Positions 2,033 through 39,777 of a stretch of DNA of 64,000 nucleotides are shown here, one piece after another (position 1 is the stretch's first letter; every line of letters starts with the position of its first letter). The position numbers and the translations under genes were made by a program. The DNA lies in the IMG/VR virus record IMGVR_UViG_3300034073_003340, positions 124,001-188,000 of that record, one strand, 5' to 3'. The notes under the pieces were generated by a model. The model was not told where the DNA came from and did no database searches. It saw only the letters and a list, made by a program, of their open reading frames with translations.

Positions 2033-2785
2033 TTACTTCTTGCGCGCTGGCAGGATGAACTTGTATTCAGCCGACTTGCTGGCCATTGAAATCTGTAATG
2101 CGCCACGCGAAGAGAACTGAAGCTTGAGGTTCTCATCAGCACCCAGCTTGAGGATTGCGAGCACTGGAGCAATACCCCAATGTAGATCACCGCCGAGAGT
2201 GCCCTCGACGTCATCCGCGATGGTCAGGAATGCGCGGTGCATCGACGAACCTTCGTCACCAATGTAGAATCGCAGTTCGTTCTTGCCCTCGACCTCAACG
2301 GTCTTGACCATGAAGAAGTTCTCGAACTGACCATAGAGGCCGGCTAGTGCCTGAAGTTCCTTGAGTTTGCTTGCCGAGGGATCGATTTCAACGTCCCAAG
2401 TGGTGCCCAGGAACTTTGCCTGTTCAGGGATCAGATCCGAAGCCATCAGACGATAAGCACCGCTGCTCTTGCCGTCAGCTGACTTAAAAGAGATTTCCTC
2501 AGGGGTCATCTTGCCATTGCGCTCACGACGCTTGACTTCAATCTTGGCGTCATCGGTCTTGAACAGGGCATAGTTGACTAGACCTTGAAGAAGACCCAAG
2601 TGGCTCATACCAAATTCACCCTTGAGTTCAGGTTCGGCCTTGAGCAGCTGACCCTTGACGATCACAGTGCGCTCATTGTCCATGGCTTCAATGATGGTCT
2701 TGTCATCGTCGCCCGTGATCTTGATAGTATCGATATTGTTGACACCAATAGCATGACGCACAATATCCTGAATAGTTTCACGCAT
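2033..2785 (-). CDS. Sliding clamp (gp45-like)
   Basis: 250 aa, beta-strand-rich clamp-like pattern, C-terminal YKFILPA, next to polB. Confidence 0.65.
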   Translation of the reverse strand: MRETIQDIVRHAIGVNNIDTIKITGDDDKTIIEAMDNERTVIVKGQLLKAEPELKGEFGMSHLGLLQGLVNYALFKTDDAKIEVKRRERNGKMTPEEISFKSADGKSSGAYRLMASDLIPEQAKFLGTTWDVEIDPSASKLKELQALAGLYGQFENFFMVKTVEVEGKNELRFYIGDEGSSMHRAFLTIADDVEGTLGGDLHWGIAPVLAILKLGADENLKLQFSSRGALQISMASKSAEYKFILPARKK

Positions 2786-2853: not shown

Positions 2854-3162
2854 TTAAATCACCCGGATTTCACACTGGCCCTTGCCAATTGGTGAATTAC
2901 CATTGGTAAAAACAGCTACTTCGTAGCCTTCACATTCCACTGAACTGGCAAACTTGTGAAAATCTTCTACCTTGGATTCTGGGATGATCCAGTTGGCTGC
3001 TTTCTTACCGTTATTGACAGCAATCATATAACCAGCATAGGTGAGCTCTGGAAATTGAGCAAACAGGAGTTCTCCCGTTCGACGCTCACTTGTCTTGAGC
3101 TCTTCGCGGGTTGGGCCCTTGGTCTTGTTAATCAGGAGAACTCTGTTCATTTTATTCCTCAA
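2854..3162 (-). CDS. Hypothetical protein
   Basis: ORF overlapping polB stop. Confidence 0.6.
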   Translation of the reverse strand: MRNKMNRVLLINKTKGPTREELKTSERRTGELLFAQFPELTYAGYMIAVNNGKKAANWIIPESKVEDFHKFASSVECEGYEVAVFTNGNSPIGKGQCEIRVI

Positions 3163-6146
3163 AAGCTGAATAGATCATTGAAAGTGGTGTCTTCTCGAGT
3201 GGCACTTAAATCCCACTTCAACACACCTATAAGATTCGAGACCTTTTTATCAATAATTGTTTCTTCCATCAGCTCATTATCAAAAGGCAGTTCCTTATAC
3301 CACTGAGGTAGATGCGGTTCATCAAAGGGATAGGCAACGCTATCCATCTTCAGAGGATTGGGCTTGAGCTTACAAACGATAACCTTCTGTCCGTCAGTAA
3401 TCTCCATGCTGAATCTGTCACCATACATTTCTCGCAAGGTATTCCAGTTCATTGCTGCGCGAACATGACCAGGGACCATGACCTTTTCCTTGGTCCCACT
3501 CTTCATGATATCCTTGCCATCGCCTTCTTGAATACGACTCATATAACCTGTGATACCATTGACCTTCTTTGGTGTTCCCTTGAGCCAGCCGTCTAGTGCC
3601 CTGAATTCCACTCGGAAATCTTTGATCATCTGGATGATTGTTTCCTTGGTACCACCATCCAACAAAGTTGTAATGATCTTTTCCAAGAATTCCTGCATCA
3701 TCTTTGGAGTGTCAGCGCGCTTGAGATCCAAACCAACTGCTTTGACCTTACCTGGCTTACCGTTAACATCTAGGCGGACGTTATCCTTGTCATACATCAA
3801 AAGAGCATAACGTTTCTTGGTGATAAACAAGCCACGACTCGCGATGAGCTCTCGACCTGCTTTGATAATTGCCCCTCTCTCAAGACCAGTATTGAACGCC
3901 ATATCCATGAATGGAGGAAAGCTTTCATTTACCGCTTCACCAATGCCATCATAAAGTTCGACCATTCGGTCTCGGTTTTGGAGCATTGGTGCCAGCTCAG
4001 GATCCGCTTCCAACATATCAACTGCGGTGAAATAAACCGAGTCAGTATCGTTGTAGAGGATCGCATCACCACGGACGTCGTAAACCCCTGTGATGATTTC
4101 ATTGGTCTTGCTGCTCATGTGTTTGGTAATTGAGCGACCCGACAGTGTAACTGACTGACCAATACGCGCATCGTAAAATCTACAACCTTCGTTGAGCAAA
4201 GCACCATAAAGAGAGTTCAGAAGAATTTTACGCGCTTGCTGTCGCTGGTTCCAAAATACTTCATGGCTTTTGGCTTCTTTTACAAAATCCGGTTCAATGA
4301 AGATACGGTCATCTTCAATACGGATAGCCTTGTCAGCAACTAGAAAATCAATCGCATCTTTGTCTCCTGATTTGATGAAATCAGGCAAATTAGCAAGATC
4401 TGCGCTATTTCTACCAGGCATGGCCCCAGTGGAAAACTTTTCCCAGTCGACCTTGAATCCTTTTACTTGAGCCGCAGCTTCAGAGAATACAGTTTCTTTG
4501 AACTGCATCTGCTTTCTCTGGGAATACCACTTGCCCAAGAGACCAGGAATAACTGCTTCTACGTCAGTTCGGAAGATTGTTCCGTTGGCAGTGATACAAT
4601 ATGGATTACCCTGAAGAAAGATGTATTCGTAGAGTTGTTCACCCGTGACTTCAATGCTCTGACCTTCTTCAAAGTCAACAACCATTGATTCCTGACTCTT
4701 GGTAGCAACCATGTCATACTCAAGGGTCGCAAATAGTCCTTCCCAACATTCAGGTCCGGGAATACCCTTGGCAAGTCTGGAGTCAATCAAAGCATTAGTG
4801 CGGTCCAGTCTTATCTGGCCCACCAGGGTCTCAGGACCCATGTTGAGGGCTCTCAGGGCAGATGGATACAGCGAGTTGATATCGCAACACGCGATTTCTC
4901 TATGGATGCCAATTTTCGGCTTAGCAACATACGCACCAACCACTGGTCGCTTTTCACCAGTATTCCTGAAAGGACGCGGACCATCATCTTCCTCATTCCA
5001 ATCATCCTCGTCATCATCCATATTGACGTCAAAGTCTGGACGTTTGCGATTAGGAACACACATACCACGCTGATGTGCTTCGTTGATGATTGCTTGCTCA
5101 ATTAGAGCAACTGATCCCATGGTTGTGGGCAGAAGAACGGTATTAGTATGGGCAATCTGGTTTGCTAGTTCGATAAAACGCTTTTTGGCGTCAATCTTCT
5201 GTAGGAGCGCAGTATCCTGGCGGTTATATTCCAGGAACTTACGAAAGTCTCGTTTGTAGAGGTTATCCAGAGTTCCGCTATATGGTGTCTTGTTTTCACC
5301 TACCTCAATTTCACCCACATAATCAAGTCGATAGCTGTGGAGTTCCTGTGGATTGTGCTTTTTGTAGAGTTCCAGATAGTCTAGATGAATACGTCCAATT
5401 AGCTCGTAAGTTTCCTGTTCCTTCTTGAACTGGATATACTTCTTGCGCTTGGGACGCTGGTTCCACAAACAAAGTTTCTTGGTATAATCCTTACCCATGA
5501 GCCGCTCAATACGGTTCACCACATAGGGAATATCGAAACCTTTGCTGTTCCAACCTGAGAGGACGTCGCAGTCCTCAATCAAGTCCAGGAACATAGTGAG
5601 GAGTTCAACCTCATCGTTACACAGATAAGTGTTGGGAAGACTTCTGCAGATCTCGTCAGCAGCTTCCCAAGTGAGGTGGTCCTTGTCGACCACAGGCAAG
5701 TTAGGCTTCAAACATACCGTGTAAAGTGTATCATCACTGGTACGATGGACTGAGATAGCCGTAATGGCACTGAATGGATCCCATGGACTCGCAAAACCTC
5801 GCTGTGGATCAAAGTCCACCTCAATATCGAAAAATCCAATATTCAGAACGGGAGATTCTACACCGAGGTAATTTTCTTCCAGACAGCGAAAAACAGGATT
5901 GATATCGCTTTCATAGGTGCGACGACCGCTTTGAAGCTTCAACTCACGCTGGAACGCTTTATTAGAGGTAAAGCTACTTTTGGATACAGGGCGACCCCAC
6001 ATATCCTTGAAACGACCACCACGAGCATCTTCATAATAGAACACATAGTTGGCGGGCAGAGATTTGAAAATTCTCTGACCATTAACGCGCTCTACGATAA
6101 GAATCTCATCCTTTTCTTTGTCATGCAGGGCATCAACGTAGGACAT
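3159..6146 (-). CDS. Family B DNA polymerase (gp43-like) with 3'-5' exonuclease
   Basis: FDIEV, WNSKGFD, YNRQD exo motifs; DINSLYPS, KILLNSLYG, YNDTDS, KKRY polymerase motifs; clamp-binding-like C-terminus NDLFSF. Confidence 0.97.
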   Translation of the reverse strand: MSYVDALHDKEKDEILIVERVNGQRIFKSLPANYVFYYEDARGGRFKDMWGRPVSKSSFTSNKAFQRELKLQSGRRTYESDINPVFRCLEENYLGVESPVLNIGFFDIEVDFDPQRGFASPWDPFSAITAISVHRTSDDTLYTVCLKPNLPVVDKDHLTWEAADEICRSLPNTYLCNDEVELLTMFLDLIEDCDVLSGWNSKGFDIPYVVNRIERLMGKDYTKKLCLWNQRPKRKKYIQFKKEQETYELIGRIHLDYLELYKKHNPQELHSYRLDYVGEIEVGENKTPYSGTLDNLYKRDFRKFLEYNRQDTALLQKIDAKKRFIELANQIAHTNTVLLPTTMGSVALIEQAIINEAHQRGMCVPNRKRPDFDVNMDDDEDDWNEEDDGPRPFRNTGEKRPVVGAYVAKPKIGIHREIACCDINSLYPSALRALNMGPETLVGQIRLDRTNALIDSRLAKGIPGPECWEGLFATLEYDMVATKSQESMVVDFEEGQSIEVTGEQLYEYIFLQGNPYCITANGTIFRTDVEAVIPGLLGKWYSQRKQMQFKETVFSEAAAQVKGFKVDWEKFSTGAMPGRNSADLANLPDFIKSGDKDAIDFLVADKAIRIEDDRIFIEPDFVKEAKSHEVFWNQRQQARKILLNSLYGALLNEGCRFYDARIGQSVTLSGRSITKHMSSKTNEIITGVYDVRGDAILYNDTDSVYFTAVDMLEADPELAPMLQNRDRMVELYDGIGEAVNESFPPFMDMAFNTGLERGAIIKAGRELIASRGLFITKKRYALLMYDKDNVRLDVNGKPGKVKAVGLDLKRADTPKMMQEFLEKIITTLLDGGTKETIIQMIKDFRVEFRALDGWLKGTPKKVNGITGYMSRIQEGDGKDIMKSGTKEKVMVPGHVRAAMNWNTLREMYGDRFSMEITDGQKVIVCKLKPNPLKMDSVAYPFDEPHLPQWYKELPFDNELMEETIIDKKVSNLIGVLKWDLSATREDTTFNDLFSF

Positions 6147-6510: not shown

Positions 6511-6517
6511 TCTTATA

Positions 6518-7869: not shown

Positions 7870-8354
7870 TATCCCCAAGCCAACTTGAAGAATGCGGCAT
7901 CACCTTTGCGGAGAAAACGATAACGATATGGGTTTACTATGACCCAACGGCCTTTGGCACAATTGTCTGCCCAGTGGGCTATTGAATGTCTAATAGCCTC
8001 TGCTGATTCACCCTGTCGTTCCTGGTCCAATATCTTATCACGATTGACCTTGACATCATATCCAGTCATCATGGCCCACCAGTTTGTCATTGAGCCATAT
8101 CTAGCATACATGAATATCAACCATACCTGAAGTGGCGGAGCCAGCTTAGACATCTGCCACCAGATATCATTACCTGTTGATACCACCAGTATCAAGGGAA
8201 TAGCAAGACATCCAGTCAGGACAATGTTGAGACTTACAAGAAATTGTTGGAAATTCAGTCCACGTTGAATCCGCTTACTGTCATAAAACAGCGCCGATGC
8301 TTTTGGCTCGTTCGTATAATTGACGTGACGCAATTTGTTTTCCTTTTGCCTCAA
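7869..8354 (-). CDS. FKLxWG-family protein with N-terminal TM segments (start uncertain)
   Basis: YRFLRKGDAAFFKLAWG C-terminus. Confidence 0.7.
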   Translation of the reverse strand: MRQKENKLRHVNYTNEPKASALFYDSKRIQRGLNFQQFLVSLNIVLTGCLAIPLILVVSTGNDIWWQMSKLAPPLQVWLIFMYARYGSMTNWWAMMTGYDVKVNRDKILDQERQGESAEAIRHSIAHWADNCAKGRWVIVNPYRYRFLRKGDAAFFKLAWG

Positions 8355-9360: not shown

Positions 9361-9765
9361 TTACCAGCGGGCAACAACCTGGATATCAATAATCTCGCCA
9401 AACTCGGTAGTCACTGTGCCAACCATATGCTTGCGATTGTCCATCCAGAAATCGTTTTCATACTCTCGCACCTCACGATTGGTTCCGCCGAGAGAATTAC
9501 CCTCTGCGTCGTGAGTGGGACGATGAGTTGAAATTCGGGTCCAGTTCGCTGGGTCCAAGAGTGCGGGCCAGTAAACGGTAGTCATCTCATTTGACTGGTC
9601 CTTGTTTACGATGTTGAACTGATTTCGCACAATCTCAGGCTCTGTACGAATCTTTTCGATCAGTGCTTGGAGACAATCCTGGGACGAGAATCGCTTCTCA
9701 CCCGGATCGCGGAATGCTGGCACCAGTCCGATGCCAGCAATGGGATTAAATCCACCGTTACTCAT
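9361..9765 (-). CDS. Hypothetical protein
   Basis: ORF coupled to ligase by TAATG overlap. Confidence 0.6.
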   Translation of the reverse strand: MSNGGFNPIAGIGLVPAFRDPGEKRFSSQDCLQALIEKIRTEPEIVRNQFNIVNKDQSNEMTTVYWPALLDPANWTRISTHRPTHDAEGNSLGGTNREVREYENDFWMDNRKHMVGTVTTEFGEIIDIQVVARW

Positions 9766-11750
9766 TATCCCCACATCTCCTTTGCCTGCGTGATCGAAAT
9801 CACATTGTCCTCACCGATGAGCTGTCGGGCCTTGACCAGCTTGCTCGAATTACCCGAAGGATCCTTGGCCACGAGGTAAGTCGTATCCTTGTTGACCGAG
9901 GAACCGATCCGTCCCGAACGAGCTTCAATCTTGGCTTCCAGGTCCTTGTCACGAATGCCCGTGAACACAACCGTGATGCCGTCGAGATCACCGCCGGTTA
10001 CCTTTTCCTTGGGAGCAACCAGCGTATAATAGCCGTCAATCTCCTTGAGGAAGTCCAGGAACTTGGGCAGATTGTCCACAATAGTCTGGGCGGTCTTGGC
10101 CTCAAAGCCTTCAAGCTTTGCGATTTCCTGAACCGTCACTGTGCCGTTGAGAATGGGATCATTGCCCAGTGCCTCAATGACCTTTGTCATCTTGCGCCGA
10201 CCAATGCCGCGACCCAGCAGTGAGGTGGCACCTGCGAGGATGCCAAGCTCTACATTGCCCAGCTTGAGCTTGAGACCGTTGTAGATCTTGGTGCCTGCGC
10301 TATCACCGGCTGCTGTCTTCAGCGTAGCTTCGTCGGCTTTGATGATCTGAGCGCAGGTTGTCAGCCCTGCATCGTAGAGCTTTTCGATGCTACCCTCGCG
10401 CAAGTGCGGAACATCCAGGCCAGTAACCCCGAAAGTGCCATTGATAATCTCAAGCTGGACTGCCCGATTGTTGGTAGTGTCGGTCATCATCAGATCGACC
10501 TGGCCATCTGTCCATTCCAGTGGTCCGAATTCATTTTCGCTGGGTTCGGCCCACTTTACTGCGGGTTCGACCACCTTCTGGATAAACGGAATAACATCAC
10601 CCGAGCGAGTGATTTGGATCTTAGCGCCAGGCGCGATCTTGTTATCCCGAATGAACTTGGCATTGAAGCCAGTAGCATAGGTGATCGTAACGCCGACCAA
10701 TTCCACCGGGTCAATTTCCACGCGCGGCTTCAAATAACCGGCCTTGCTGGGGTTCCAGTGGACTGCCTTGACCGTTGCGATTGCGACGTTGTCCTCGCTG
10801 CCGACCTTGAACTTCTTGCTGCTGATGGGGTTGATGCTGCTGGACTTGCGAGTCAGCGTTTCAACAATCGCGAGGTTGTCGAGATCGATCACGATACCGT
10901 CAATTGCTGTCGGACTCTTCGACCGTCGCTCATTGAGGTAGGCGATCAGGAACTCATCAGTGAGTTCGCGACCCTTTTTCGTGATATACGGCGTGACCTC
11001 ATACCCGGCTTCTTCGAGAACTCGGAACTGATCCGACTTACTCATCAGAGGCTTCACGACACTAGTAGCGATCAATTTGACATTGTCGTAAAAGCTGTCA
11101 GGCGATTCACTGGCGTTCATTCGACCCGCGACATAGTTGCGCGGATTCTTGTAAGTGCGACCACCTTCAGCTTCTGCCTTGGCCTTCATGTTTGCGAAGA
11201 CGTCATCTGCCATGATGACTTCCAGGCGGATGTCGTGATTTTCGATATTCATCACATCCAGGCTACGGGGAAGGCTCTTGATGCGCTTCATATGACGTGT
11301 AATGTCCGCGCCCTGAAAACCGTTGCCGCGGGAATAGGCAATACGAAGTTCTCCGGCCTTACCATGGCAGTTAAGTGCGGAAGTGCCGTCCTGTTTGTCC
11401 GAGATCACAAAGGTCTCGTCCAGCCAGCCGTTGGCTTCAATCCACTTGAGGGTTTCGCCTTCGTATACCTGATCCAGAGATCCCATGGGATGGGGCAGAT
11501 CGATCTTGCCGCCGCGCACATCACTACCAACAGAGACCAGGAAGAGGTTCTTGGGATCGAGAGCTCGGAGCATCTTCTCGAGCTCATCATACTGAGCGTC
11601 GGTGAGGAAGCTCTCTTCTTCCACTCCATTGTGGAAAAGGTCCGATGCTTCAGACAGGATGTGGACGAGCATTTCGGGGGTCGGTTCGACCTCGCCGTTG
11701 AGAATCTGCTGGGATGCTTCGACCGCATCGAAGAACTGAATTGTGGTCAT
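9765..11750 (-). CDS. ligA: NAD-dependent DNA ligase
   Basis: Domain Ia (TDAQYD), HPMGSL, KQDG adenylation motif, SRGNG, NPRN, IDGIV, RSGDVIP, HhH region, C-terminal BRCT (VVFTG..GSSV..YLV..SSKL). Confidence 0.95.
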   Translation of the reverse strand: MTTIQFFDAVEASQQILNGEVEPTPEMLVHILSEASDLFHNGVEEESFLTDAQYDELEKMLRALDPKNLFLVSVGSDVRGGKIDLPHPMGSLDQVYEGETLKWIEANGWLDETFVISDKQDGTSALNCHGKAGELRIAYSRGNGFQGADITRHMKRIKSLPRSLDVMNIENHDIRLEVIMADDVFANMKAKAEAEGGRTYKNPRNYVAGRMNASESPDSFYDNVKLIATSVVKPLMSKSDQFRVLEEAGYEVTPYITKKGRELTDEFLIAYLNERRSKSPTAIDGIVIDLDNLAIVETLTRKSSSINPISSKKFKVGSEDNVAIATVKAVHWNPSKAGYLKPRVEIDPVELVGVTITYATGFNAKFIRDNKIAPGAKIQITRSGDVIPFIQKVVEPAVKWAEPSENEFGPLEWTDGQVDLMMTDTTNNRAVQLEIINGTFGVTGLDVPHLREGSIEKLYDAGLTTCAQIIKADEATLKTAAGDSAGTKIYNGLKLKLGNVELGILAGATSLLGRGIGRRKMTKVIEALGNDPILNGTVTVQEIAKLEGFEAKTAQTIVDNLPKFLDFLKEIDGYYTLVAPKEKVTGGDLDGITVVFTGIRDKDLEAKIEARSGRIGSSVNKDTTYLVAKDPSGNSSKLVKARQLIGEDNVISITQAKEMWG

Positions 11751-19333: not shown

Positions 19334-22021
19334 TTAACCAAACATTACATTGAATAGCGCGGTTCCTGCTGCTCCTGATCCTGTGGCGCTTGCTGAAGCG
19401 CCAACAATTTCGATTGCTCCTGGATTGGTGTATCTTATATTGAAAGCACCGGTTGGAATTCTCATAGTTCTGATACCACCAATTGTTCCATTGTCGCCGT
19501 AGCAACCAAAGGAAATTGGGTGACCATAAGAGGGTGTATAGGTAATATTGATCGAAGTTCCAGAGAACGATACAACGAAGTCAGCGTTTGAAACTCCTGA
19601 AATACTAGAAATCGCACCACCGGTATAATTGGCAATAAATCTTACTGAGGTAACATTGCCGGTACCACCTCCACTACCGCCTGACCCACCAGGAATGTTA
19701 ACTTGAGCAACACCGGTTGGGCTTTCTGTTACTGTTACACCAGCACCAGTAAAGTTGATGGTCGTTGGGTTAGAAACAATAGAAGTTCCATTGTTTGCTA
19801 CTGCGGTGATATTACCATTGGTTCCTGCCGGGCCTTGTGGGCCGGTTTCGCCTCGAACTAGTCCCACATCCTCAGAAGTAGCGTCAGTGTAGGTAAGAAT
19901 CAGTCGACCACTTGGGTTTACTGCGGCACTTGTAATACCTCGGCCATCTTCACCATCAATACCGTTGATACCAGCCGCACCAGCTGGGCCACGAGCATTA
20001 CCAGCATCAATAACGGTGCTGTCGCTCATAGCCAAAGTTAGGACACCGGTTGTTTGATTTATTGAGGCCGAAGTTACACTACGACCTGCAGGGCCGGTTA
20101 GTCCTTGTGGGCCCTGTGGTCCGGTATCACCACGAACACGACCCGCATCAACCACTGAGGAATCAGTGTAGGTGACAATCAGGTTACCTTCGGTATTAAC
20201 AGATAGGCTTGTTACACCACGACCAGCAGGACCGGTTTCACCCTGTGGACCAGTGGCACCAGTAACACCCTGCGGTCCTTGTGGACCAGTAGCACCTGTT
20301 TCACCTTGTGGACCTGTAATATTTCCTGCGTTGATGCTGGTGTTGTCACTCATCTCTAGGATGAGATCTTCATTAACTACGCTTGCGGAGACAACATTTC
20401 GACCGGCAGGTCCAGCAGGACCCTGTGGGCCCGCGGGACCGGTATCACCAGTATCACCCTTTGGACCCAATACTGAACCACCAACCACAATAGAGGTAGA
20501 GTCGTTCATCACCAAGGTAAGAGTGGAACCAGTTACACTAGCAGAAGCAATGCTGGTTCCTTGTGGACCGACTTCACCTTGAGGACCCTGCGGACCTGTA
20601 GCACCCGTAGCACCAGGAATTCCTTGGATACCTTGCGGGCCAGTGTCGCCGGTATCGCCTTTTTCTCCCTGCGGTCCTTGTGGCCCGGCCGGACCCGCTG
20701 GTCCTTGAGGACCAATTTCTCCCTGTGGACCTTGTGGTCCAACGATTCCAGTAGCACCAGTAGAACTAATGACTACCTTGTATTGTTGTGTTTCACCAGG
20801 AATGCCAGATGGTTGGTAATCTAAGGTAATTCCAGATCCGGCCTCTAGACGAATATTAGTCTGACGTCCATAATCGATATAACCGCCCGCACCGCCATTG
20901 GCTGTAGGGCTCCAATTCAATAGTCCAATACCGGTGGTTTCCAGAACAGTTCTGCCACTGTTGGGACCTTGTGTAAGGGTCCTAACATTGAGACCGTCGC
21001 CTACAACTAGGTTTCCAATAGGGAACTGCTGATTGCCGACCTCTGTTGGCTTCAACAAGATTACCTGTTGGCCCCCTCCGGATGATGGAGGAGTGTAATC
21101 AATAAAGGCTTCACCCGACAGCCCTCCATATCCTACAGTAAATCCTTCACCAAACGAAAACTTGAAAATGCCTTCTAGGGTCTCTTGATCTGGTGTTTGC
21201 TGTGGATCAATGGGCGTTTCTCCGGCACCATTGACTGTCATTCCTATTAGAATCTGAGCGTTGCTAGCATCCTCATCGTTCTGTTGAACCAAAACGCCGC
21301 CACCAAATGTCAAAGTAGATGCTGAAAACAGATCGCTAAGGACTGGAACTTCGTTACCGTTACCGTCTACCACAAACTGGAAGCCATTGACCTCTAGTCC
21401 TGGTATATGAGCAATGGCTGTAGAAGGTGCTCCGTTTTCAGTAAGAATTTCTACACCGGCACCAGTAAACGCCAATCGCGCAGTTGGGTTAATAGACGGG
21501 GCATCAACATAGCCACCACCCACTTCATCATAAGTTCGTTCAGTTACGATGATACTACCACCAGAACCGGCTGGACCCTGAGGACCTGCTGGACCTTGTG
21601 GACCGGCTGGTCCCTGTGGACCGGTTTCGCCTTGAGGACCAGTAGGACCTGCAGGACCCGCAGGTCCTTGCGGCCCCTGGGGTCCTTGTGGGCCGATAGG
21701 ACCCTGTGGACCAGTATCACCAGTATCGCCTTTATCGCCCTTTGGACCTTGCGGACCAGTTACCGGTGAAGCACTAGCGCCTTGAACTCGAACTGGGCCT
21801 CCAGTAGCAACCTCTCCAGTGCTCAGATATTTTTTACCATCGGCCGCGCCAGGCTGAACTCTAATTGAATTTGAAGTAGTTCCAGGCTCAGCGGCTGAAG
21901 AATTCTGAGCTGCTATCTGGGCAGCATTAGAAGCATCAGCATTTGATGGATCGTTAGGAGCAGTTACCCCTGGAACGGGCAAGTAAGTTCCTGGATTCTG
22001 CGGGGTTGGGACCTTGGCCAT
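19334..22021 (-). CDS. Collagen-like fibre protein
   Basis: Many GXY runs separated by five GR.VTSASV..G.L.LT.SD...DAG.VRG modules. Confidence 0.85.
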
Positions 22022-22574: not shown

Positions 22575-23363
22575 ATGAGCAATCTATTCAACACGCTGAA
22601 CTTATTCGGAGCAATGGCTAAAGGATCTTGCGACGATATGATAGACCCACCAAGCGGAAGCCTTTCTTATGAGGTAATACCTATTCCAGAAGGTCCTGGA
22701 GTCGAGAAATTACAGCAAGTTCTTTCTCATCTTCCTCAAATAGATATCGAAAAAGGACCTTGGATTGCAGGTGGTTCAGCTAGACGGCTGCTTCAGGGTG
22801 AAGGCTTAGCGTCTGGAGATATCGATATCTTCTTTCCAAATTACGCCTCATGGGAGTTTTTCAGCAAGCATCTGTCTTCGTATGAGATCATCGTCAAAAC
22901 CAAAAAAGCCACTACCTTTTTGATAGAAGGTATGAAAGTTCAGATCATACGGAGAGCTTTCTACAAAGACCTCATTTCGGTATTCAAGGATTTTGACTTT
23001 ACCGTTTGTCAGATAGCGACCGATGGCAAGAATATTGCCTGTACCAAGCAGTCTCATTTGGATATTGTAGATCAAATCTTGCGGCTTGCTACACAGGGAA
23101 CAATCTCCAAGCATACCCTAGTTCAGAGAATGTCAAAATATGTAAACTACGGCTTCCTCCCAGAACTGGGGCTGTACGAAATAATTGTGCGGAGTGGTCT
23201 AGATTATACTAGCGCCTACAACATTTTTAGCGAAACAGAGGTAGCGATTTATGACATCTTTACCGGTGAATCTTCAGACGACAATATTCCGTCCGACTCA
23301 TTGAATGACGGTGTCTTAAGAACTATTGCTCGCAAGCTAGGATTGGAAAAAGAAGATGTCTGA
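22575..23363 (+). CDS. Nucleotidyltransferase (CCA/poly(A) polymerase head-like)
   Basis: IAGGSAR...GDIDIFF...FDFTVCQIA. Confidence 0.75.
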   Translation: MSNLFNTLNLFGAMAKGSCDDMIDPPSGSLSYEVIPIPEGPGVEKLQQVLSHLPQIDIEKGPWIAGGSARRLLQGEGLASGDIDIFFPNYASWEFFSKHLSSYEIIVKTKKATTFLIEGMKVQIIRRAFYKDLISVFKDFDFTVCQIATDGKNIACTKQSHLDIVDQILRLATQGTISKHTLVQRMSKYVNYGFLPELGLYEIIVRSGLDYTSAYNIFSETEVAIYDIFTGESSDDNIPSDSLNDGVLRTIARKLGLEKEDV

Positions 23364-24716: not shown

Positions 24717-24751
24717 GACACCTGGTACAACTTTTTCTTGTACCAGGTGTC
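24717..24751 (-). terminator. Terminator after clpA
   Basis: GACACCTGGTACAA/TTGTACCAGGTGTC 14-bp stem. Confidence 0.7.
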
Positions 24752-24758
24752 TCTTATT

Positions 24759-27128
24759 TTAAGCGAATAGATCCGCTTGCGCTTCTGTCGTCTTGGATTC
24801 AGAGGAGTTGATAACAAGCTTGTCGTTATCAACTGTCACCGTAGCGTGGCCACCGTCCTTGAGGGCACCAAACAACATAATACGGCTCAGTGGCTTACTG
24901 AGTTCGTCCTGGATAAGGCGGCTCAGTGGTCGAGCACCCATCTTGGGATCATATCCCTTCTTCGCCAAGTAGTTACGAGCGACGTCATCAACGTCGATGG
25001 TAACACCCTTTTCCTGCGCTTGCTTGTTCAGTTGAGTCAGGAACTTTTCAACAATCATGAGCATGTTCTCGCTCTTGAGAGCCTTGAACTTCACGATAGC
25101 ATCAAGTCGGTTCCTAAACTCAGGAGCAAACATCTTTTCAATGACCTTGTCGTCATTTCCAACAGTGCTGTTGTCACCAAAGCCCAGAGTGTTTTTCTGG
25201 AGTTCACTAGCACCAGCATTGCTAGTCATAATGAGGATCACGTTGCGGAAGTTGACGGTCTTGCCTGCGCTATTAGTCAGTTGACCGTTATCCATGACCT
25301 GTAGGAAAATATTGAAGATATCCGGGTGAGCCTTCTCAAGTTCGTCAATGAGCAGAACGCAATGAGGACTGTTCTCGACCGCGTTAGTCAGAAGACCTGA
25401 ACCCGAGGCACCGTCACCAAATCCAACGTAACCCGGAGGCGAGCCAATGAACTTGCTGACCGAGTGCTTTTCCATATACTCGCTCATATCAAAACGATGT
25501 AGTGGAATGCTCAAGGTAGCAGCAAGCTGCTTCGCAAGTTCGGTCTTACCCACGCCAGTTGGCCCAGCGAAAAGATAATTGCCCTGCGGCTTGTTGGGAT
25601 CGCGAAGGCCTGCCCGGCTCAGGAATACAGCATCAACAACGTTATCAATTGCGTCATCCTGTCCAAACACTGCCTTATGCAGATCCTGTTCAAGATGCGC
25701 CAGCTTCTGTGTTTCGTCTTCCTTGACCGTGCGAGCTGGGATCTTCGCAATCCGGCTGACTTCTTCCTCAACCAATTCAATAGTGATCTCGGTCTTGCGG
25801 TCAGCCTCTGGCGTAATCTTCTGACGAGCACCGGCCGCGTCGATGACGTCAATAGCCTTGTCAGGCAGCATCCGGTCAGTCACATAGCGGGCAGTCAACT
25901 CAACGGCGGCTTCCAGGGCCTCCTGTGTGTAGGTAATGCCATGATATTCGGCATATACCTGACTAATACCCTGTAGAATACGCTTGGCGTCTTCTACGCT
26001 AGGCTCATTGACATCCAATTTCTGGAAACGTCGCAGGAGAGCACGGTCCTTTTCAAAATGCTTTCGATATTCCTCAAAAGTCGTGCCGCCAATACACCGC
26101 AGCTTGCCCTTGGCCAATGCCGGCTTCAAAAGGTTTGCCACATCAAGCCCGCCGCTACTGCCGGCTCCTGCTCCCATGATGGTGTGGATTTCGTCAATAA
26201 ACAACATGGGCATAATGCCCTTTTCTTCACCGACCTTTTCTACCGCATCAATAATTTGCTTGACCCGTTCCTCCATGTCACCACGGAACTTGGTTCCGGC
26301 CATGAGAGTTCCGATTTCCAACGAATACACGATGCTGCCCTTGATCGCATCTGGGACATTACCTTCGGCAATCATCTTGGCAAGCCCTTCAACTACCGCA
26401 GTCTTACCGACTCCAGGCTCACCAACTACGACCGCATTATTCTTGGTGCGACGAGCAGTAGTCAGAATAAGTGAATCCACCTCGGCCTCGCGACCAATAA
26501 GCGGGTCAATCTTTCCAGCAAGAGCCTGCTCATTGAGATTAACGCAGAACTTCTCCAAAAGGCGCTCACTCTTGCTCTTCTTAGAACCAGAGATGGGTTC
26601 ACCGTCTTCATCAACTTCAACGGCGGGAGAATCACCGGCGTCCTTGGCCTTGAGATCTGCCACCAGATCCGGTTCGTCATCATCTAGCAGATCATCATGA
26701 GCAATTGTGGTCTTGACATCAAAGGCATCAACATTCTGTTTTGCCAAGAAATAGACCGCATGACTATCCTGATCCTGCTCGGAAAGCAAAGAGACTAGAA
26801 TATCAACAGCGCGAATGGTATGACGACCACTGAAAAGCGCCTGTGTTACCGTTCTCTGAACCACTCGACTCAGAGGAAGAGTTTGACGTGGAGGAGTGCC
26901 ATTGGCTTTGCCAAGAGCACCGCTGGCAAAATGCGAAACCAGATCAGCAGAAATACCAGAGACGTTTGCTCCGATTTCGTGCAGAACTTCGATAACTCGC
27001 TGATCCTGGAGGATGCTGGCCAGCAAGTGTTCCAGCGTAACATATTCATGATCGTGGCGTTCAGCAATTTCTGCCGCACGATCAAAAATTTCCTGAGCCT
27101 TTGTTGGGTCAAATTGATCCAAGGACAT
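24759..27128 (-). CDS. clpA: ATP-dependent Clp protease ATPase ClpA
   Basis: HEYVTLEHLL N-domain, two AAA modules (GEPGVGKT, GPTGVGKT), LGF ClpP-docking loop, GARPL. Confidence 0.95.
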   Translation of the reverse strand: MSLDQFDPTKAQEIFDRAAEIAERHDHEYVTLEHLLASILQDQRVIEVLHEIGANVSGISADLVSHFASGALGKANGTPPRQTLPLSRVVQRTVTQALFSGRHTIRAVDILVSLLSEQDQDSHAVYFLAKQNVDAFDVKTTIAHDDLLDDDEPDLVADLKAKDAGDSPAVEVDEDGEPISGSKKSKSERLLEKFCVNLNEQALAGKIDPLIGREAEVDSLILTTARRTKNNAVVVGEPGVGKTAVVEGLAKMIAEGNVPDAIKGSIVYSLEIGTLMAGTKFRGDMEERVKQIIDAVEKVGEEKGIMPMLFIDEIHTIMGAGAGSSGGLDVANLLKPALAKGKLRCIGGTTFEEYRKHFEKDRALLRRFQKLDVNEPSVEDAKRILQGISQVYAEYHGITYTQEALEAAVELTARYVTDRMLPDKAIDVIDAAGARQKITPEADRKTEITIELVEEEVSRIAKIPARTVKEDETQKLAHLEQDLHKAVFGQDDAIDNVVDAVFLSRAGLRDPNKPQGNYLFAGPTGVGKTELAKQLAATLSIPLHRFDMSEYMEKHSVSKFIGSPPGYVGFGDGASGSGLLTNAVENSPHCVLLIDELEKAHPDIFNIFLQVMDNGQLTNSAGKTVNFRNVILIMTSNAGASELQKNTLGFGDNSTVGNDDKVIEKMFAPEFRNRLDAIVKFKALKSENMLMIVEKFLTQLNKQAQEKGVTIDVDDVARNYLAKKGYDPKMGARPLSRLIQDELSKPLSRIMLFGALKDGGHATVTVDNDKLVINSSESKTTEAQADLFA

Positions 27129-27626
27129 TCACTTTTTCCTTTCGCTTTTAGCTTGCTTTTTTCTCGCAAGATCGAGAGTTAGCTTGCTAACACGATCTGT
27201 AAAACAAACACCGTCGAGGTGATCTAATTCGTGCTGAAAGCACCGGGAAGCAATTCCAGAAAGCTCTTCAGTTATGACATTACCGTCCCGATCTTGATAG
27301 CGAACAGTGATTTCGTCCGGTCGCTTTACTTTGAGTTTGAGGTTTGGAAAACTCAAACAACCCTCAACAAAGGTAACAATTCTATCACCCTTGCTAATGA
27401 TCTCTGGATTATAATAGAAATTTGTCTGCCCACCTATATTCATGGCGAATATTCGGTAGAGAAACCCCATTTGATTGGCGGAGAACCCTATCCCGCCTTC
27501 TTCAATCATCAAACGTTCGAGTTCCGCTTCGATATTCTTTGAATCTGCGGGTGTTTTCTTGAAGTCCCAAACGGAACTCTTGGAGGAGAGACTCTCTGCC
27601 CCTTCGGTCTTTAGGGTGAACATCAC
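27129..27626 (-). CDS. def: Peptide deformylase
   Basis: GIGFSANQ, EGCLS, QHELDH motifs. Confidence 0.95.
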   Translation of the reverse strand: MMFTLKTEGAESLSSKSSVWDFKKTPADSKNIEAELERLMIEEGGIGFSANQMGFLYRIFAMNIGGQTNFYYNPEIISKGDRIVTFVEGCLSFPNLKLKVKRPDEITVRYQDRDGNVITEELSGIASRCFQHELDHLDGVCFTDRVSKLTLDLARKKQAKSERKK

Positions 27627-28026: not shown

Positions 28027-28884
28027 TCAACCGTTATTCAAATTACGAGCCTTCTCGATAAGTTCGCGCTGTTCATCGGAAAGTTTTGATGGCGAGAAAA
28101 CGACCTCAACCATCATGTCCCCTCTTTGACCATTTCCCATTGGCATACCCTTACCAGCAGCTCTCAAACTTTGACCAGGTTGAATTCCTGCTGGGATTCG
28201 CATCTTGATCTTACTACCTTCTATTGTGGTAATCTCGCGATCGGCGCCCAACATTGCGTCCATATAATCAATAGTGGTACTGGTAACCAAATGGTATCCC
28301 ATTCTCACAAATACATTATGGGGAATGATGTTTATACGGATGTATAGATCACCCGGCGGGGCTTCGGCTATCGAATTATCCCCTTTTCCATGGAACCTGA
28401 GGCGGATTCCGTCTTGTATACCTGAAGGTATCTTAAACTGAATAGATTGCGCTTCCTTACCAGGTAGATTATATTTGACGTCAGCATCCTTACCCCAGAA
28501 CGCTTCCTCCAAAGTTATGGCATAAGAAATAACGATATCACGATTTACTACGGTATCATACTGATAATGTCTCGCTCGACGATTCTGAATATCACGCAAT
28601 ATATCGTCTAGATTGACAGATCCTCCAAATCCTCCCGGCTGATTACTCCAGTATGACTGTGATCCAGTGCGAAACCCACCAGATCTTTCTAAATCATATT
28701 GGGCCCGTTTGGTTGGGTCCTTGAGAGTATCATATGCTTCGTTGATTTCTTTGAACTTGGCCTCAGCATTTGAAGATTTGTTGGTATCAGGATGAAACTC
28801 TTTTGCCAGCTTGCGATAAGCAGATTTCAAGGTAGCATCATCTGCTGTCGAGGTGACCCCAAGGATCTGGTAAAAATCTTTCAT
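28027..28884 (-). CDS. dnaJ: DnaJ/CbpA-type co-chaperone (no Zn finger)
   Basis: J domain with HPD; GDLY and GKGMP C-terminal motifs. Confidence 0.9.
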   Translation of the reverse strand: MKDFYQILGVTSTADDATLKSAYRKLAKEFHPDTNKSSNAEAKFKEINEAYDTLKDPTKRAQYDLERSGGFRTGSQSYWSNQPGGFGGSVNLDDILRDIQNRRARHYQYDTVVNRDIVISYAITLEEAFWGKDADVKYNLPGKEAQSIQFKIPSGIQDGIRLRFHGKGDNSIAEAPPGDLYIRINIIPHNVFVRMGYHLVTSTTIDYMDAMLGADREITTIEGSKIKMRIPAGIQPGQSLRAAGKGMPMGNGQRGDMMVEVVFSPSKLSDEQRELIEKARNLNNG

Positions 28885-35113: not shown

Positions 35114-35518
35114 TTACCCTGAGACTTTGATAGTTTGACCTTCTACGCTATCGTCGTCTAGCATAGGTATGATCCACCTCAAATTGGGAATGATGTTATC
35201 GGGTAGATCATAGGTGTCAAATACTCCAATGACTTCGTCAGTGCAAGTTCTAATTTCCTCTAACGCCTCACTGTCATGGTATGAGAAGAAGTGAACCTTG
35301 AAGCCTGGTCCCACAAGGGTAATCCTCAGGTCCCAATCAAGATCCACTCCTGCCTCTTCGATGAACTCCCGGTTCATAGCGCCAAAGGAAAGTTCACCAG
35401 GCTCTATTTTTCCACCAATGGCGTTATAAAGACCAGCTTGCCAGGCTGGTCGATTCTTGAGAATCAATGCTACTTTTGATCCGTCGTCATTATACAGGAG
35501 TCCAGCGACATATTCCAT
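35114..35518 (-). CDS. Nudix hydrolase
   Basis: GGKIEPGE....MNREFIEEAG Nudix box. Confidence 0.9.
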   Translation of the reverse strand: MEYVAGLLYNDDGSKVALILKNRPAWQAGLYNAIGGKIEPGELSFGAMNREFIEEAGVDLDWDLRITLVGPGFKVHFFSYHDSEALEEIRTCTDEVIGVFDTYDLPDNIIPNLRWIIPMLDDDSVEGQTIKVSG

Positions 35519-36150
35519 TATCGTTTATTCCCTGCGCCCATGATCTTGATTTGATCACAAACACCGAGATCAAGGGCTTCTTCAGCAGATAACCAGACAT
35601 CATGAGCTGGTAGCAGCTTTTCTTCAATCTGTGACTTAGTCATACCGGTATGCTTGATATAATGATTCATCATTCGCTGCTGTGTGAGTTCGTATTCTCT
35701 AACAGTGGCAAAGAGTTCATGAGCCTTACCACGATCACCCCATGACCACTGGTGGCTTAAAATTGAAGTATTTGGTGTCAGAATTCTATGACCTTTGGCT
35801 CCCGCAATGAATGTTAAGAACCCACAGCTACCAATCATACCTAAGCCAATTGTATGAACTGGAATAGCCGAGCCTTCCATCGCATCAATAATAGCAAAAG
35901 CACTATTGACTTCACCACCTGGACTGTTGATTATCAGGGTGAGATGGTCAAAGTCATTCTGCGGTGTAAGGTTAGCTTCTAGAATCCAAGTTACGATTTT
36001 GGAAGCATTCTCACTATTGAAACCACCACTCAAAAAGTAGATACCTTTGTCTCGCAGGGTGGGTTGTGGATTGACCGGGGGCGACGTCAGCAAAGTTGTA
36101 GCGTCAGGTCCAACCGCGACCGCCTGATCCACTACGGCTTTCTTTTTCAT
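35518..36150 (-). CDS. clpP: ClpP peptidase
   Basis: INSPGG, catalytic Ser (IGSCG), His (SHQ), Asp (HDVWLSAEEA). Confidence 0.9.
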   Translation of the reverse strand: MKKKAVVDQAVAVGPDATTLLTSPPVNPQPTLRDKGIYFLSGGFNSENASKIVTWILEANLTPQNDFDHLTLIINSPGGEVNSAFAIIDAMEGSAIPVHTIGLGMIGSCGFLTFIAGAKGHRILTPNTSILSHQWSWGDRGKAHELFATVREYELTQQRMMNHYIKHTGMTKSQIEEKLLPAHDVWLSAEEALDLGVCDQIKIMGAGNKR

Positions 36151-36669: not shown

Positions 36670-36754
36670 GCGCCTATGGTGGAATTGGTAGACACATCAG
36701 ATTTAGGTTCTGACGTCGAAAGGTGTGGGGGTTCGAGTCCCTCTAGGCGCACCA
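36670..36754 (+). tRNA. tRNA-Leu(TAG)
   Basis: GCGCCTA/TAGGCGC acceptor, TCAGA-TTTAGGT-TCTGA anticodon arm, long variable arm, TTCGA, CCA. Confidence 0.95.
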
Positions 36755-37078: not shown

Positions 37079-37154
37079 GGCTCCTTAGGCTAACTGGAAA
37101 AACCGGAGACCTCCTAAGTCTCATTTACAGGTTCGAGTCCTGTAGGGGTCACCA
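37079..37154 (+). tRNA. tRNA-Arg(CCT)
   Basis: GAGAC-CTCCTAA-GTCTC anticodon arm, ACAGG-TTCGAGT-CCTGT, CCA. Confidence 0.9.
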
Positions 37155-37956: not shown

Positions 37957-38033
37957 CGGGGTTTAGCGCAGCCTGGTAGCGCACCTGCTTTGGGAGCAGG
38001 GGGCCGTAGGTTCGAATCCTACAATCCCGACCA
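37957..38033 (+). tRNA. tRNA-Pro(TGG)
   Basis: CCTGC-TTTGGGA-GCAGG anticodon arm, canonical D/T arms, CCA; TATAAATA at 37938-37945. Confidence 0.97.
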
Positions 38034-39045: not shown

Positions 39046-39777
39046 TCACAGTCTAAACAACACTACATCTTCTTGGAGAGTATGTCTGACTAAGATATGC
39101 TCTCCACGTTGCTCTGCGATCCAAAAGTCACCCAACATTCGTTCAAGCCTTCTGGAATTGGCAATTGCTGTTTCGTCCAAACGGGTAGCAGAGCTCATCA
39201 CAGCGTTGCTCTCATAGACGGCTTCATGGCTACCATGGTCTACTAAGACAAGCTCTACGGACACCCCTCGGGCTTCTAAGACAACTTTTTTGCCCTCGAT
39301 TGTCATATTGTCTAGGTCGCTTGGCCTGAAGAACTCAACGAGGTCTGATGACTCAGACTCTTGATCTTCTTCCAATGATACCATTCTAACATTTGCCTTG
39401 AGGTTATCATCAGTAACCGGAAGGATATCCTCTACTCCATAAATCTGACTTTTCCACGACGAGATTCCAGTTAGACCTTTGAGACTACCTAGGGTATCCA
39501 GTAGCTTTTTGGGAAACTCCTCGTCTCTTAGAAATTCAATAAAGACCACATAATATCCATCCTCATTTGGCGCAGGACTAACATCAGTATCTAATATGGA
39601 AGAAGCACCCTTTTGGATAAAACGGTTCAAGTCCTGGCTGGGTTCACGATCTAGAACATAGAAGGCAACCACGATACTGTCGTCGTCTAGTTTGCTTTCA
39701 TATTCATCAACGGAAATCATTGGAAGAACTAGTTCTTCCAAATCATTTTCCTTAAGACCTTCAAACAGATTGGACAT
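39046..39777 (-). CDS. Acidic hypothetical protein
   Basis: 243-aa ORF coupled to upstream gene. Confidence 0.7.
   Translation of the reverse strand: MSNLFEGLKENDLEELVLPMISVDEYESKLDDDSIVVAFYVLDREPSQDLNRFIQKGASSILDTDVSPAPNEDGYYVVFIEFLRDEEFPKKLLDTLGSLKGLTGISSWKSQIYGVEDILPVTDDNLKANVRMVSLEEDQESESSDLVEFFRPSDLDNMTIEGKKVVLEARGVSVELVLVDHGSHEAVYESNAVMSSATRLDETAIANSRRLERMLGDFWIAEQRGEHILVRHTLQEDVVLFRL

What the first reader, a model, noticed from the sequence alone, without database searches (positions are those of the whole stretch)
24759..24800. Phage ClpA ends in QADLFA, a beta-clamp-binding-like motif
Seen: flexible tail SSESKTTEA-QADLF-A. Established: bacterial clamp binders use QL[S/D]LF, and the E. 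coli DnaE internal motif is QADMF. The protein retains the LGF loop and the phage also encodes ClpP. Inference: a phage ClpAP tethered to the host beta clamp (or the phage clamp) to dismantle or remodel replisomes.
Basis: partly seen in the sequence, partly recalled or inferred. Interest (0 to 1): 0.6.

Follow-up and report, generated by a model that had tools for sequence, protein, structure and literature searches.

The report
Phage ClpA tail, clamp-like motif
A giant phage's own ClpA unfoldase ends in a short QADLFA tip on a floppy, fast-evolving tail; selection protects the tip and it looks like a sliding-clamp docking motif, but only one shallow phage lineage has it and clamp binding is untested.

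Summary
ORF 24759..27128 (-) is a 789-aa ClpA with both AAA+ modules and the LGF ClpP loop intact. It lies in a 436-kb jumbo phage that also encodes two ClpP, ClpS, ClpX and a PCNA-fold clamp (2033..2785). Residues 774-789 are a low-confidence tail ending QADLFA.

QADLF is the only strict beta-clamp-motif match in 584 phage ORFs. The phage family-B polymerase ends ...FNDLFSF, and that tail is invariant in relatives.

About 280 ClpA relatives were read. Only one other lineage (92% identical) keeps the tip, as QPDLFA. In that pair Q, D, L and F all carry synonymous changes, while the linker is scrambled. So the tip is under purifying selection.

Sister lineages have the same polymerase tail, yet have no ClpA tail or unrelated acidic tails. 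Across the clade the tails are Glu/Ala-rich, 48% end in Ala, and an acidic-aliphatic-x-Ala tip recurs in separate lineages. E. coli ClpA's last nine residues are a known autodegradation tag.

My best reading (0.4) is a lineage-specific version of a ClpA C-terminal recognition tag. A clamp tether, to host beta or to the phage clamp, is not excluded (about 0.3). The one complex prediction gave no verdict.

The parts
24759..27128 (-). clpA gene, 789 aa: N-domain, D1 and D2 AAA+ modules, D2-small domain, C-terminal tail
   Evidence: TIGR02639 946 bits; phrog_4871 871 bits; AF2 model mean pLDDT 82.8
24762..24779 (-). codons of the tip Q784-A-D-L-F-A789 (CAA GCG GAT CTA TTC GCT)
   Evidence: The 92%-identical relative has CAG CCC GAC CTG TTT GCT. 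The changes in Q, D, L and F are all synonymous.
24780..24809 (-). linker of the tail (N774-A783, NSSESKTTEA), fast-evolving
   Evidence: Only 2 of 10 residues are kept, plus a 2-codon indel, against the 92% relative. It is absent in relatives at 86-88% identity.
25176..25190 (-). ClpP-docking loop T-L-G-F-G (residues 647-651)
   Evidence: read from the translation; G649 and F650 are invariant in 66 relatives
24717..24751 (-). terminator-like hairpin (14-bp stem) 8 nt after the clpA stop
   Evidence: a compensated equivalent stem is present in all seven relatives aligned
35518..36150 (-). phage ClpP paralogue (210 aa)
   Evidence: PF00574, E 6e-33; a second ClpP lies at G000:105213-105788, outside the window
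2033..2785 (-). phage sliding clamp, PCNA/gp45 fold (250 aa)
   Evidence: No Pfam hit. AF2 pLDDT 94. Foldseek PDB: the listed top hits are all PCNA, probability 1.0, TM about 0.67.
3159..6146 (-). family-B DNA polymerase (995 aa) ending ...TTFNDLFSF (tail codons 3162-3188)
   Evidence: The tail is identical in 9 relatives and reads TTFNTLFDF or NTFATLFDF at 46-49% identity. The T4 gp43 tail reads ...ASLDFLFG.
27129..27626 (-). peptide deformylase, directly upstream of clpA on the same strand
   Evidence: PF01327, E 2e-38; same neighbour in phage Phosso
28027..28884 (-). DnaJ-type co-chaperone, same strand and gene block
   Evidence: DnaJ and DnaJ_C domains; ClpA is next to DnaJ in Atu_ph07 too

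Best explanation
The gene is a functional phage ClpA unfoldase. It works with the phage's own ClpP paralogues and ClpS. Its last 16 residues are a disordered, evolutionarily labile extension of the kind that many ClpA proteins carry.

The tip, Q-x-D-L-F-A-COOH, is a short linear motif kept by selection in this shallow lineage. I take it to be a local version of the clade's recurrent 'acidic - aliphatic - x - Ala-COOH' ending. By analogy with the last nine residues of E. coli ClpA, which mark ClpA for degradation, it would be a C-terminal recognition tag. A Clp unfoldase would grip this tag: ClpA itself in trans, or the phage or host ClpX. That would set ClpA levels, and ClpS binding could modulate it. 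On this reading the match to the beta-clamp motif is incidental.

Shown: gene identity, the disordered tail, selection on the tip, the recurrent tip pattern, and the presence of ClpS, ClpX and ClpP. Inferred: that the tip is a degron.
For: (1) The tails are hypervariable. In the clade with at least 65% identity there are more than a dozen unrelated tails and several tail-less forms ending ...LVIA, on a well-resolved tree. So the tail is not needed for core ClpA function.
(2) The tails share properties rather than sequence: Glu 20%, Ala 14.5%, Phe 1.1%. 30 of 63 tails of 6 aa or more end in Ala, against 44 of 584 ORFs in the genome.
(3) A[DE][ILVMF]xA-COOH occurs in 4 tails from separate lineages (AEITA twice, AEILA, ADLFA). 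Shuffles give 0.11, and 0 of 2000 reach it. [DE][ILVMF]xA-COOH occurs in 7 tails against 0.68 expected.
(4) Phosso ends ...AEEAAEA and Atu_ph07 ends ...ETETA. E. coli-type ClpA ends ...KAEAAH (L059-L062). Deleting its last 9 residues prevents autodegradation (PMC7568338).
(5) The phage has ClpS, an adaptor that prevents autodegradation of the unfoldase in E. coli (PMC8138137), and ClpX.
(6) The tip is constrained. 54% of four-fold sites differ between the two lineages. The linker keeps 2 of 10 residues and the tip keeps 5 of 6, with synonymous changes in Q, D, L and F. The probability is 0.0016 at the linker's rate, and Fisher gives 0.012-0.024.
Against: No degradation data exist for any phage ClpA tail. 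The recurrent pattern rests on related sequences, so the shuffle statistics overstate independence.

A degron would not obviously need the Gln at -6 or a Phe, which is rare in these tails. Yet both are kept. They are exactly the residues a beta-clamp motif needs: Q, [LM] and [FL] are critical, while positions 2 and 3 are tolerant. The one tip residue that changed (A to P) is the tolerant position 2.

The closest sister tails (..VELLQG..VDLSQG..EADLTETSLVV) do not end in Ala.
Confidence: 0.4

Rival explanations
1. Host beta-clamp tether. QADLF-COOH docks in the hydrophobic cleft of the host DnaN ring. This places phage ClpAP on clamp-loaded host DNA, where it can unfold or degrade clamp-bound host proteins or the clamp itself.
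For: QADLF fits the canonical Q-phi-x-[LM]-[FL] motif and differs from the E. coli Pol III alpha internal motif QADMF (Kd about 2.7 uM) only by Leu for Met at position 4. Many clamp-binding motifs sit at a disordered C-terminus, where a free carboxylate or acidic flank helps (PMC11139829).

It is the only strict match in the proteome. Selection acts on Q, D, L and F, while the tolerant position 2 changed.

A separate 91-aa phage protein starts MKDPHQLELPL. That is an Hda-like N-terminal hexameric motif. It is kept as QLEFNF or QLELNF in homologues of only 26-29% identity. So this phage group may already target the host clamp.
Against: Only one other lineage has the motif, and sister phages lack it or have no tail. 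Ala, and still more Pro, at position 2 lowers affinity. The host and its DnaN are unknown. No binding test was possible. The phage replicates with its own polymerase and clamp.
Confidence: 0.17
2. Phage-clamp tether. [quoted passage not shown] T4 gp43 binds gp45 in this way; from recalled knowledge, gp33 and gp55 do too.
For: Polymerase and ClpA are the only 2 of 584 ORFs with DLF within the last 5 residues. The polymerase tail ...FNDLFSF is invariant in 9 relatives and conserved as F-x-x-L-F-x-F down to 46% identity. It resembles the T4 gp43 tail ASLDFLFG. The 250-aa ORF has a clamp fold.
Against: ClpA has only 2 (L, F) of the 4 invariant hydrophobic anchors of the polymerase tail. Relatives with an identical polymerase tail and a 75-94% identical clamp have other ClpA tails or none. 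The Gln kept in ClpA has no counterpart in the polymerase tail.
Confidence: 0.12
3. No specific function. The tail is neutral read-out of a labile 3' end, and the QADLF match and its retention in one relative are chance.
For: Tails are gained, lost and replaced freely in the clade. Only two independent lineages carry the tip.
Against: Four of five conserved tip codons differ synonymously while the adjacent linker is scrambled. The probability is about 0.002 at the linker's rate. The expected number of strict motifs at C-termini is 0.0066 per genome.
Confidence: 0.15
4. The tip docks on another partner. Candidates are ClpA's own N-domain or ClpS, the neighbouring DnaJ, or an unknown phage or host protein. 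It would act as an autoinhibitory or localising peptide.
For: The tip is selected but lineage-specific. Acidic-hydrophobic C-terminal tips are a common kind of docking peptide (general knowledge). Cellular ClpA tails also carry recurrent tips of unknown role, such as ..VPKVPLVKV..KPPLLTAE and ..EPALAE.
Against: No candidate partner is singled out by any result here.
Confidence: 0.16

Closest known systems
E. coli ClpA C-terminal autodegradation tag (last 9 residues; the deltaC9 variant is used to stop autodegradation)
   Same: It is a flexible extension after the D2-small domain of ClpA. Its tip is Ala/Glu-rich (..KAEAAH against ..AEITA..AEEAAEA..ADLFA). A ClpS gene is present in the same genome.
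   Different: There is no sequence homology of the tails. The phage tip has Leu-Phe and a conserved Gln. Degradation was not tested.
Bacterial beta-clamp-binding motifs (QL[SD]LF; Q-phi-x-[LM]-[FL]): Pol II and Pol IV C-termini, Pol III alpha QADMF, Hda N-terminus
   Same: It is a pentapeptide match (QADLF) at the end of a disordered acidic tail. The critical Q, L and F are conserved, and the tolerant position 2 is variable.
   Different: The carrier is a protease unfoldase, and no CC-licensed paper in the library mentions 'clamp-binding motif' together with ClpA. The motif is not conserved among orthologues. Position 2 is Ala or Pro rather than Leu. Binding is untested.
T4/RB69-type polymerase C-terminal tail that binds the gp45 clamp (T4 gp43 ...ASLDFLFG)
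   Same: It is at the C-terminus, and its acidic + Leu/Phe + small-residue ending shares D-L-F with this phage's polymerase tail.
   Different: It lacks two of the four invariant aromatic anchors of the polymerase tail. It does not co-occur with the (invariant) polymerase tail across relatives.
Clp gene sets of Rak2-like/Atu_ph07-like jumbo phages (ClpA next to DnaJ, plus ClpX, ClpS, ClpP)
   Same: The gene block is the same (deformylase - ClpA, DnaJ nearby). ClpA is 49-54% identical to Atu_ph07 and Phosso. ClpS, ClpX and ClpP are present.
   Different: Those ClpA proteins end ..ETETA or ..AEEAAEA, with no QxDLF.
ssrA-type C-terminal degrons (non-polar end, ..LAA-COOH) read by ClpX and ClpA
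   Same: It is a non-polar C-terminal tripeptide ending in Ala on an unstructured tail. This comparison rests on established knowledge of ssrA tags, not on a test here.
   Different: The tail is part of the gene, not added by tmRNA, and the phage has no tmRNA. The sequence LFA is not a documented degron.

Membership tests
ClpA (TIGR02639 / PRK11034) | Two AAA+ modules with Walker A and B, plus the Clp N-domain | tested here: met
   GEPGVGKT 236-243, LFIDEIH 309-315, GPTGVGKT 522-529, LLIDELEKA 592-600; Clp_N, AAA, AAA_2, AAA_lid_9 and ClpB_D2-small all hit
ClpA (TIGR02639 / PRK11034) | ClpP-docking [LIV]-G-[FL] loop in D2 | tested here: met
   T-LGF-G at 647-651; G649 and F650 invariant in 66 relatives
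ClpA (TIGR02639 / PRK11034) | Score above the curated equivalog cut-off | tested here: not met
   946.4 bits against a cut-off of 993.15, and PRK11034 792 against 1350. It is a divergent phage branch of ClpA. ClpA is still the best family by far (ClpB 700, ClpV 606).
Beta-clamp-binding motif carriers | Sequence fits Q-phi-x-[LM]-[FL] in a disordered terminus or loop | tested here: met
   QADLF at 784-788, one residue from the C-terminus; pLDDT about 50; motif definition from PMC11139829
Beta-clamp-binding motif carriers | Motif conserved among orthologues | tested here: not met
   Only the 92% lineage has QPDLFA. 0 of 77 cellular and about 200 phage ClpA tails carry a strict motif.
Beta-clamp-binding motif carriers | Physical binding to DnaN through the motif | not testable with these tools
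T4-type clamp-interacting C-terminal tails | Shares the clamp-binding residues of the cognate polymerase tail | tested here: inconclusive
   Polymerase tail invariants are F-x-x-L-F-x-F. ClpA has D-L-F only, so 2 of 4 anchors.
T4-type clamp-interacting C-terminal tails | Cognate PCNA/gp45-type clamp encoded by the phage | tested here: met
   2033..2785: AF2 pLDDT 94, PCNA fold
ClpA C-terminal autodegradation tag | Unstructured extension after D2-small, dispensable for the core enzyme | tested here: met
   Profiles end at 765-780; tail-less close relatives exist; pLDDT 50
ClpA C-terminal autodegradation tag | Tail-dependent degradation of ClpA by ClpAP, blocked by ClpS | not testable with these tools
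   Only the precedent in E. coli and the presence of ClpS and ClpP

The most novel reading that the evidence does not exclude
A phage-encoded ClpAP protease is physically recruited to a DNA sliding clamp through a C-terminal Q-x-D-L-F motif. The host beta clamp is the best motif match; the phage's own PCNA-like clamp is the alternative, since its polymerase tail ends DLFSF. The unfoldase would then act on clamp-bound proteins at replication forks. A separate small phage protein with a conserved Hda-like N-terminal QLELPL motif suggests that the phage group also targets the host clamp by a second route.
Probability: 0.28. Interest if true: 0.8.

Novelty: new variant of a known kind. Interest (0 to 1): 0.42.

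Why it matters
Phage-borne Clp machines are catalogued in jumbo phages, but the two papers consulted here offer only conjecture about their function. The hypervariable C-terminal tail may be where these enzymes are regulated or aimed.

If the tip is a degron, it gives a simple handle on how a phage times its own protease. If it is a clamp tether, it would be, to my knowledge, the first protease docked on a sliding clamp by a canonical clamp-binding motif. No CC-licensed paper in the library mentions 'clamp-binding motif' together with ClpA. It would also be a new way for a phage to interfere with replication.

Either way the test is small: one peptide, two clamps and one degradation assay.

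Tried and rejected
(1) Complex prediction of the phage clamp trimer with ClpA residues 750-789 returned 'no answer' (score 0.25, mark 0.32). It is evidence neither for nor against binding.

(2) The metagenome-contig scan with ClpA returned only relatives of about 50% identity, which I took to be cellular ClpA. It added no close relatives and served only as a control set of tails.

(3) A DNA-pattern scan of IMG/VR for 'DLFA-stop + terminator stem' found only the already known 92% relative. The 90%-identity cluster holds just 3 sequences, which make 2 lineages.

(4) The other ORFs ending in ..LF(x) include a tail tube protein, a tail sheath and a head-tail adaptor. The rest have no assigned function. 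I take them as chance.

(5) The genome-wide excess of C-terminal DLF or LF is not significant on its own.

(6) No Pfam gp45 (PF02916) or DnaN N-terminal domain (PF00712) hit was found in the genome, and there is no tmRNA whose tag could be compared.

(7) The N-terminal M[SA]NLF found on three proteins turned out to sit on the major head protein, a virion protein and a nucleotidyltransferase-like protein. It is probably unrelated to clamps.

(8) The apparent DNA homology of QADLFA with QAEILA and QVEPSA of 78-79% relatives is not backed by the tree. Those lineages are separated from the query by lineages with other tails or none. Shared ancestry of the tips is therefore uncertain.

(9) The word search for the 91-aa QLELPL protein found only one 90% relative.
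Full report
WHAT IS THERE. The window is bases 124001-188000 of a single 435,856-bp phage contig with direct terminal repeats and 46% G+C. ORF 24759..27128 on the minus strand encodes 789 residues ending ...DNDKLVINSSESKTTEAQADLFA.

It is a ClpA. TIGR02639 scores 946 bits over residues 10-765, a little under the curated equivalog cut-off of 993. ClpB scores 700 and ClpV 606. Pfam finds Clp_N, two AAA modules, AAA_lid_9 and ClpB_D2-small. Both Walker A/B pairs and the ClpP-docking loop T-LGF-G (647-651) are intact.

An AF2 model built on 66 relatives has mean pLDDT 82.8. It drops to 50 over the last nine residues. All family profiles stop at residue 765-780.

CONTEXT. A peptide deformylase (27129..27626) lies directly upstream on the same strand, and a DnaJ (28027..28884) is close by. 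This arrangement is also seen in Sinorhizobium phage Phosso and Agrobacterium phage Atu_ph07. Their ClpA proteins are the best cultured matches, at 54% and 49% identity. The Atu_ph07 paper already lists ClpA, ClpX, ClpS, ClpP and DnaJ (PMC6102473).

This phage has two ClpP genes, at window 35518..36150 and at G000:105213-105788. It also has a ClpS (G000:355216-355446) and a ClpX (G000:362574-363791). A 14-bp terminator-like hairpin follows the clpA stop by 8 nt. A compensated equivalent is present in all seven relatives aligned.

THE CLAMP AND THE POLYMERASE TAIL. ORF 2033..2785 has no Pfam hit. It folds at pLDDT 94 into a two-domain PCNA/gp45-type clamp. The listed top Foldseek PDB hits are all PCNA, at probability 1.0 and TM about 0.67. 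No hit to the Pfam gp45 (PF02916) or DnaN N-terminal (PF00712) models was found in the genome.

The adjacent family-B polymerase (3159..6146) ends ...TTFNDLFSF. This tail is identical in nine related IMG/VR phages with 79-92% identical polymerases. It reads TTFNTLFDF or NTFATLFDF in relatives at 46-49% identity. It resembles the clamp-binding tail of T4 gp43...ASLDFLFG. That the T4 tail binds gp45 is established knowledge, not tested here. So the phage's own clamp-binding tail probably contains D-L-F. Polymerase and ClpA are the only two of 584 ORFs with DLF in the last five residues.

IS THE MOTIF MORE THAN CHANCE? The strict pattern Q[LA][SD][LM]F occurs once in the proteome, and that one is this tail. 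The expectation is 0.4 anywhere and 0.0066 at C-termini. The motif fits the current definition of canonical beta-clamp motifs, Q-phi-x-[LM]-[FL]. It differs from the Pol III alpha internal motif QADMF only by Leu for Met at position 4. Several known motifs sit at disordered C-termini (PMC11139829).

A post-hoc motif match is weak evidence, so I looked at evolution.

CONSERVATION. I read the C-termini of 120 relatives from the word search (92-53% identity). I also read 80 IMG/VR loci, 77 ClpA sequences of about 50% identity from metagenomes that I took to be cellular, and four cultured jumbo phages.

Only one other lineage keeps the tip. It is represented by two sequences 99% identical to each other and 92% identical to the query, and it ends ...ISHAEETVNQPDLFA. 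A DNA-pattern scan found no further member.

On a tree of the clade with at least 65% identity, the QxDLFA pair is sister to lineages ending ..EADLTETSLVV..EEPSTDSAF..VELLQG and ..VDLSQG. It sits next to a tail-less group ending ..LVIA. The same phages keep the polymerase tail unchanged, and their clamps are 75-94% identical.

SELECTION ON THE TIP. Between the query and the 92% relative, 54% of four-fold degenerate sites differ, so silent sites are near saturation. The ten linker residues keep only two identities and carry a two-codon indel. That is about what neutrality predicts.

The six tip codons read CAA GCG GAT CTA TTC GCT in the query and CAG CCC GAC CTG TTT GCT in the relative. Q, D, L and F each changed synonymously, the terminal A is unchanged, and only position 2 changed (A to P). 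At the linker's retention rate, the chance of keeping at least 5 of 6 residues is 0.0016. Fisher's test gives 0.012-0.024.

The synonymous changes also rule out a recent transfer of the 3' end. So the tip is a functional short motif in this lineage. This does not say what it binds.

WHAT THE TAILS HAVE IN COMMON. Tails of 6 aa or more occur in 63 of 115 clade members. They are Glu-rich (20%), Ala-rich (14.5%) and Val-rich, and poor in Phe (1.1%). 30 of 63 end in Ala, against 44 of 584 ORFs genome-wide.

The ending A-[DE]-[ILVMF]-x-A-COOH appears in four tails from separate branches: AEITA twice, AEILA and ADLFA. Shuffles give 0.11, and 0 of 2000 reach it. [DE]-[ILVMF]-x-A-COOH appears in seven tails against 0.68 expected. 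Phosso ends ..AEEAAEA, Atu_ph07 ends ..ETETA and E. coli-type ClpA ends ..KAEAAH.

In E. coli the last nine residues of ClpA make it a substrate of its own protease; the deltaC9 variant is used to prevent this (PMC7568338). Adaptors such as ClpS prevent autodegradation of the unfoldase (PMC8138137). The phage encodes ClpS, ClpX and ClpP.

The QADLFA tip thus belongs to a recurrent class whose known precedent is a degradation tag. This is my best explanation, at confidence 0.4. It is an inference by analogy; nothing here measures degradation.

WHY THE CLAMP READING STAYS ALIVE. The residues kept by selection (Q, L, F) are the ones that matter for beta-clamp binding. The residue that changed is at the tolerant position 2. 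Phe is rare in these tails. A degron has no obvious need for Gln at -6.

The phage also encodes a 91-aa protein (G000:196302-196577, outside the window) that begins MKDPHQLELPL. Homologues at 26-29% identity in two related phages begin MRDPRQLEFNF and MRDTNQLELNF, and a 90% relative keeps QLELPL. This looks like the Hda-type N-terminal hexameric clamp motif. It hints that the group does address the host clamp.

Against the phage-clamp version, ClpA carries only two of the four invariant hydrophobic anchors of the polymerase tail (F-x-x-L-F-x-F). Against both versions, sister phages do without the motif. I put the host clamp at 0.17, the phage clamp at 0.12, another partner at 0.16 and no function at 0.15.

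VERDICT. The gene and its Clp neighbours are a known kind of jumbo-phage equipment. The tail tip is a real, selected, lineage-specific short motif on a hypervariable tail. Whether it is a clamp tether cannot be decided with the data at hand. The wider tail pattern and the E. coli precedent make a C-terminal recognition or degradation tag somewhat more likely. Peptide binding to the two clamps and a tail-dependent degradation assay would settle it.

No reads tool was used.

Noticed in passing
G000:C1:196302-196577 (-), outside the window (it would be window 72302-72577); relatives L194 and L196: A 91-aa protein starts MKDPHQLELPLEHN. That is an Hda-like N-terminal beta-clamp hexapeptide (Q-L-x-L-x-L) at residues 6-11. 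It is kept as QLEFNF or QLELNF in homologues of only 26-29% identity and as QLELPL in a 90% relative. Two other homologues seem to lack it. It is a candidate host-clamp binder or inhibitor.
   Followed up: partly
G000:C1:362574-363791 (ClpX), 355216-355446 (ClpS), 105213-105788 (second ClpP); window 35518-36150 (ClpP): The phage carries a full Clp set: ClpA, ClpX, ClpS and two ClpP paralogues, plus DnaJ and peptide deformylase next to clpA.
   Followed up: partly
L105-L184 (ClpA of about 50% identity from metagenomes, taken to be cellular): These ClpA tails are long and basic or Pro-rich, but they end in a few recurrent tips (..VPKVPLVKV..KPPLLTAE/D..EPALAE..EPEAVE). I know of no assigned role for these conserved C-terminal tips.
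   Followed up: no
window 22575-23363 (+), 39046-39777 (-); G000:C1:40136-41359 (-): Three proteins begin M-[SA]-N-L-F. I estimate about 0.01 expected by composition; this is my own estimate, not a tool result. They are a nucleotidyltransferase-like protein, a virion structural protein and the gp23-type major head protein. It may be a shared N-terminal targeting or propeptide signal.
   Followed up: partly
window 19334-22021 (-): An 895-aa protein has long collagen-like G-P-Q/G-x-y repeats interspersed with repeated beta-rich modules. It is probably a fibre.
   Followed up: no
window 127-1518 (-): A 463-aa class-I aminoacyl-tRNA-synthetase-like protein (tRNA-synt_1 plus Anticodon_1 domains). 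It is much shorter than cellular Ile/Val/Leu enzymes.
   Followed up: no
window 36670-36754, 37079-37154, 37957-38033; G000:C1:99130-99204 and 293258-293333: ARAGORN tRNAs in the genome. Three lie in the window: Leu-tag, Arg-cct and Pro-tgg. Two calls have anticodon CUA, which is amber-suppressor-like. There is no tmRNA.
   Followed up: no
L016 (IMGVR_UViG_3300012942_000031), match 3001-6981: The polymerase gene of this relative spans about 1 kb more than the others (3981 nt against 2988 nt matched). This suggests an intein or other insertion.
   Followed up: no
G000:C1:13338-15140 (-), outside the window: A Ro60/TROVE plus vWA protein (600 aa), an RNA-binding protein family that I recall as uncommon in phages.
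   Followed up: no
window 8281-9318 (-) and 9765-11750 (-): A UvdE UV-damage endonuclease and an NAD-dependent DNA ligase with a BRCT domain sit near the polymerase and clamp genes.
   Followed up: no
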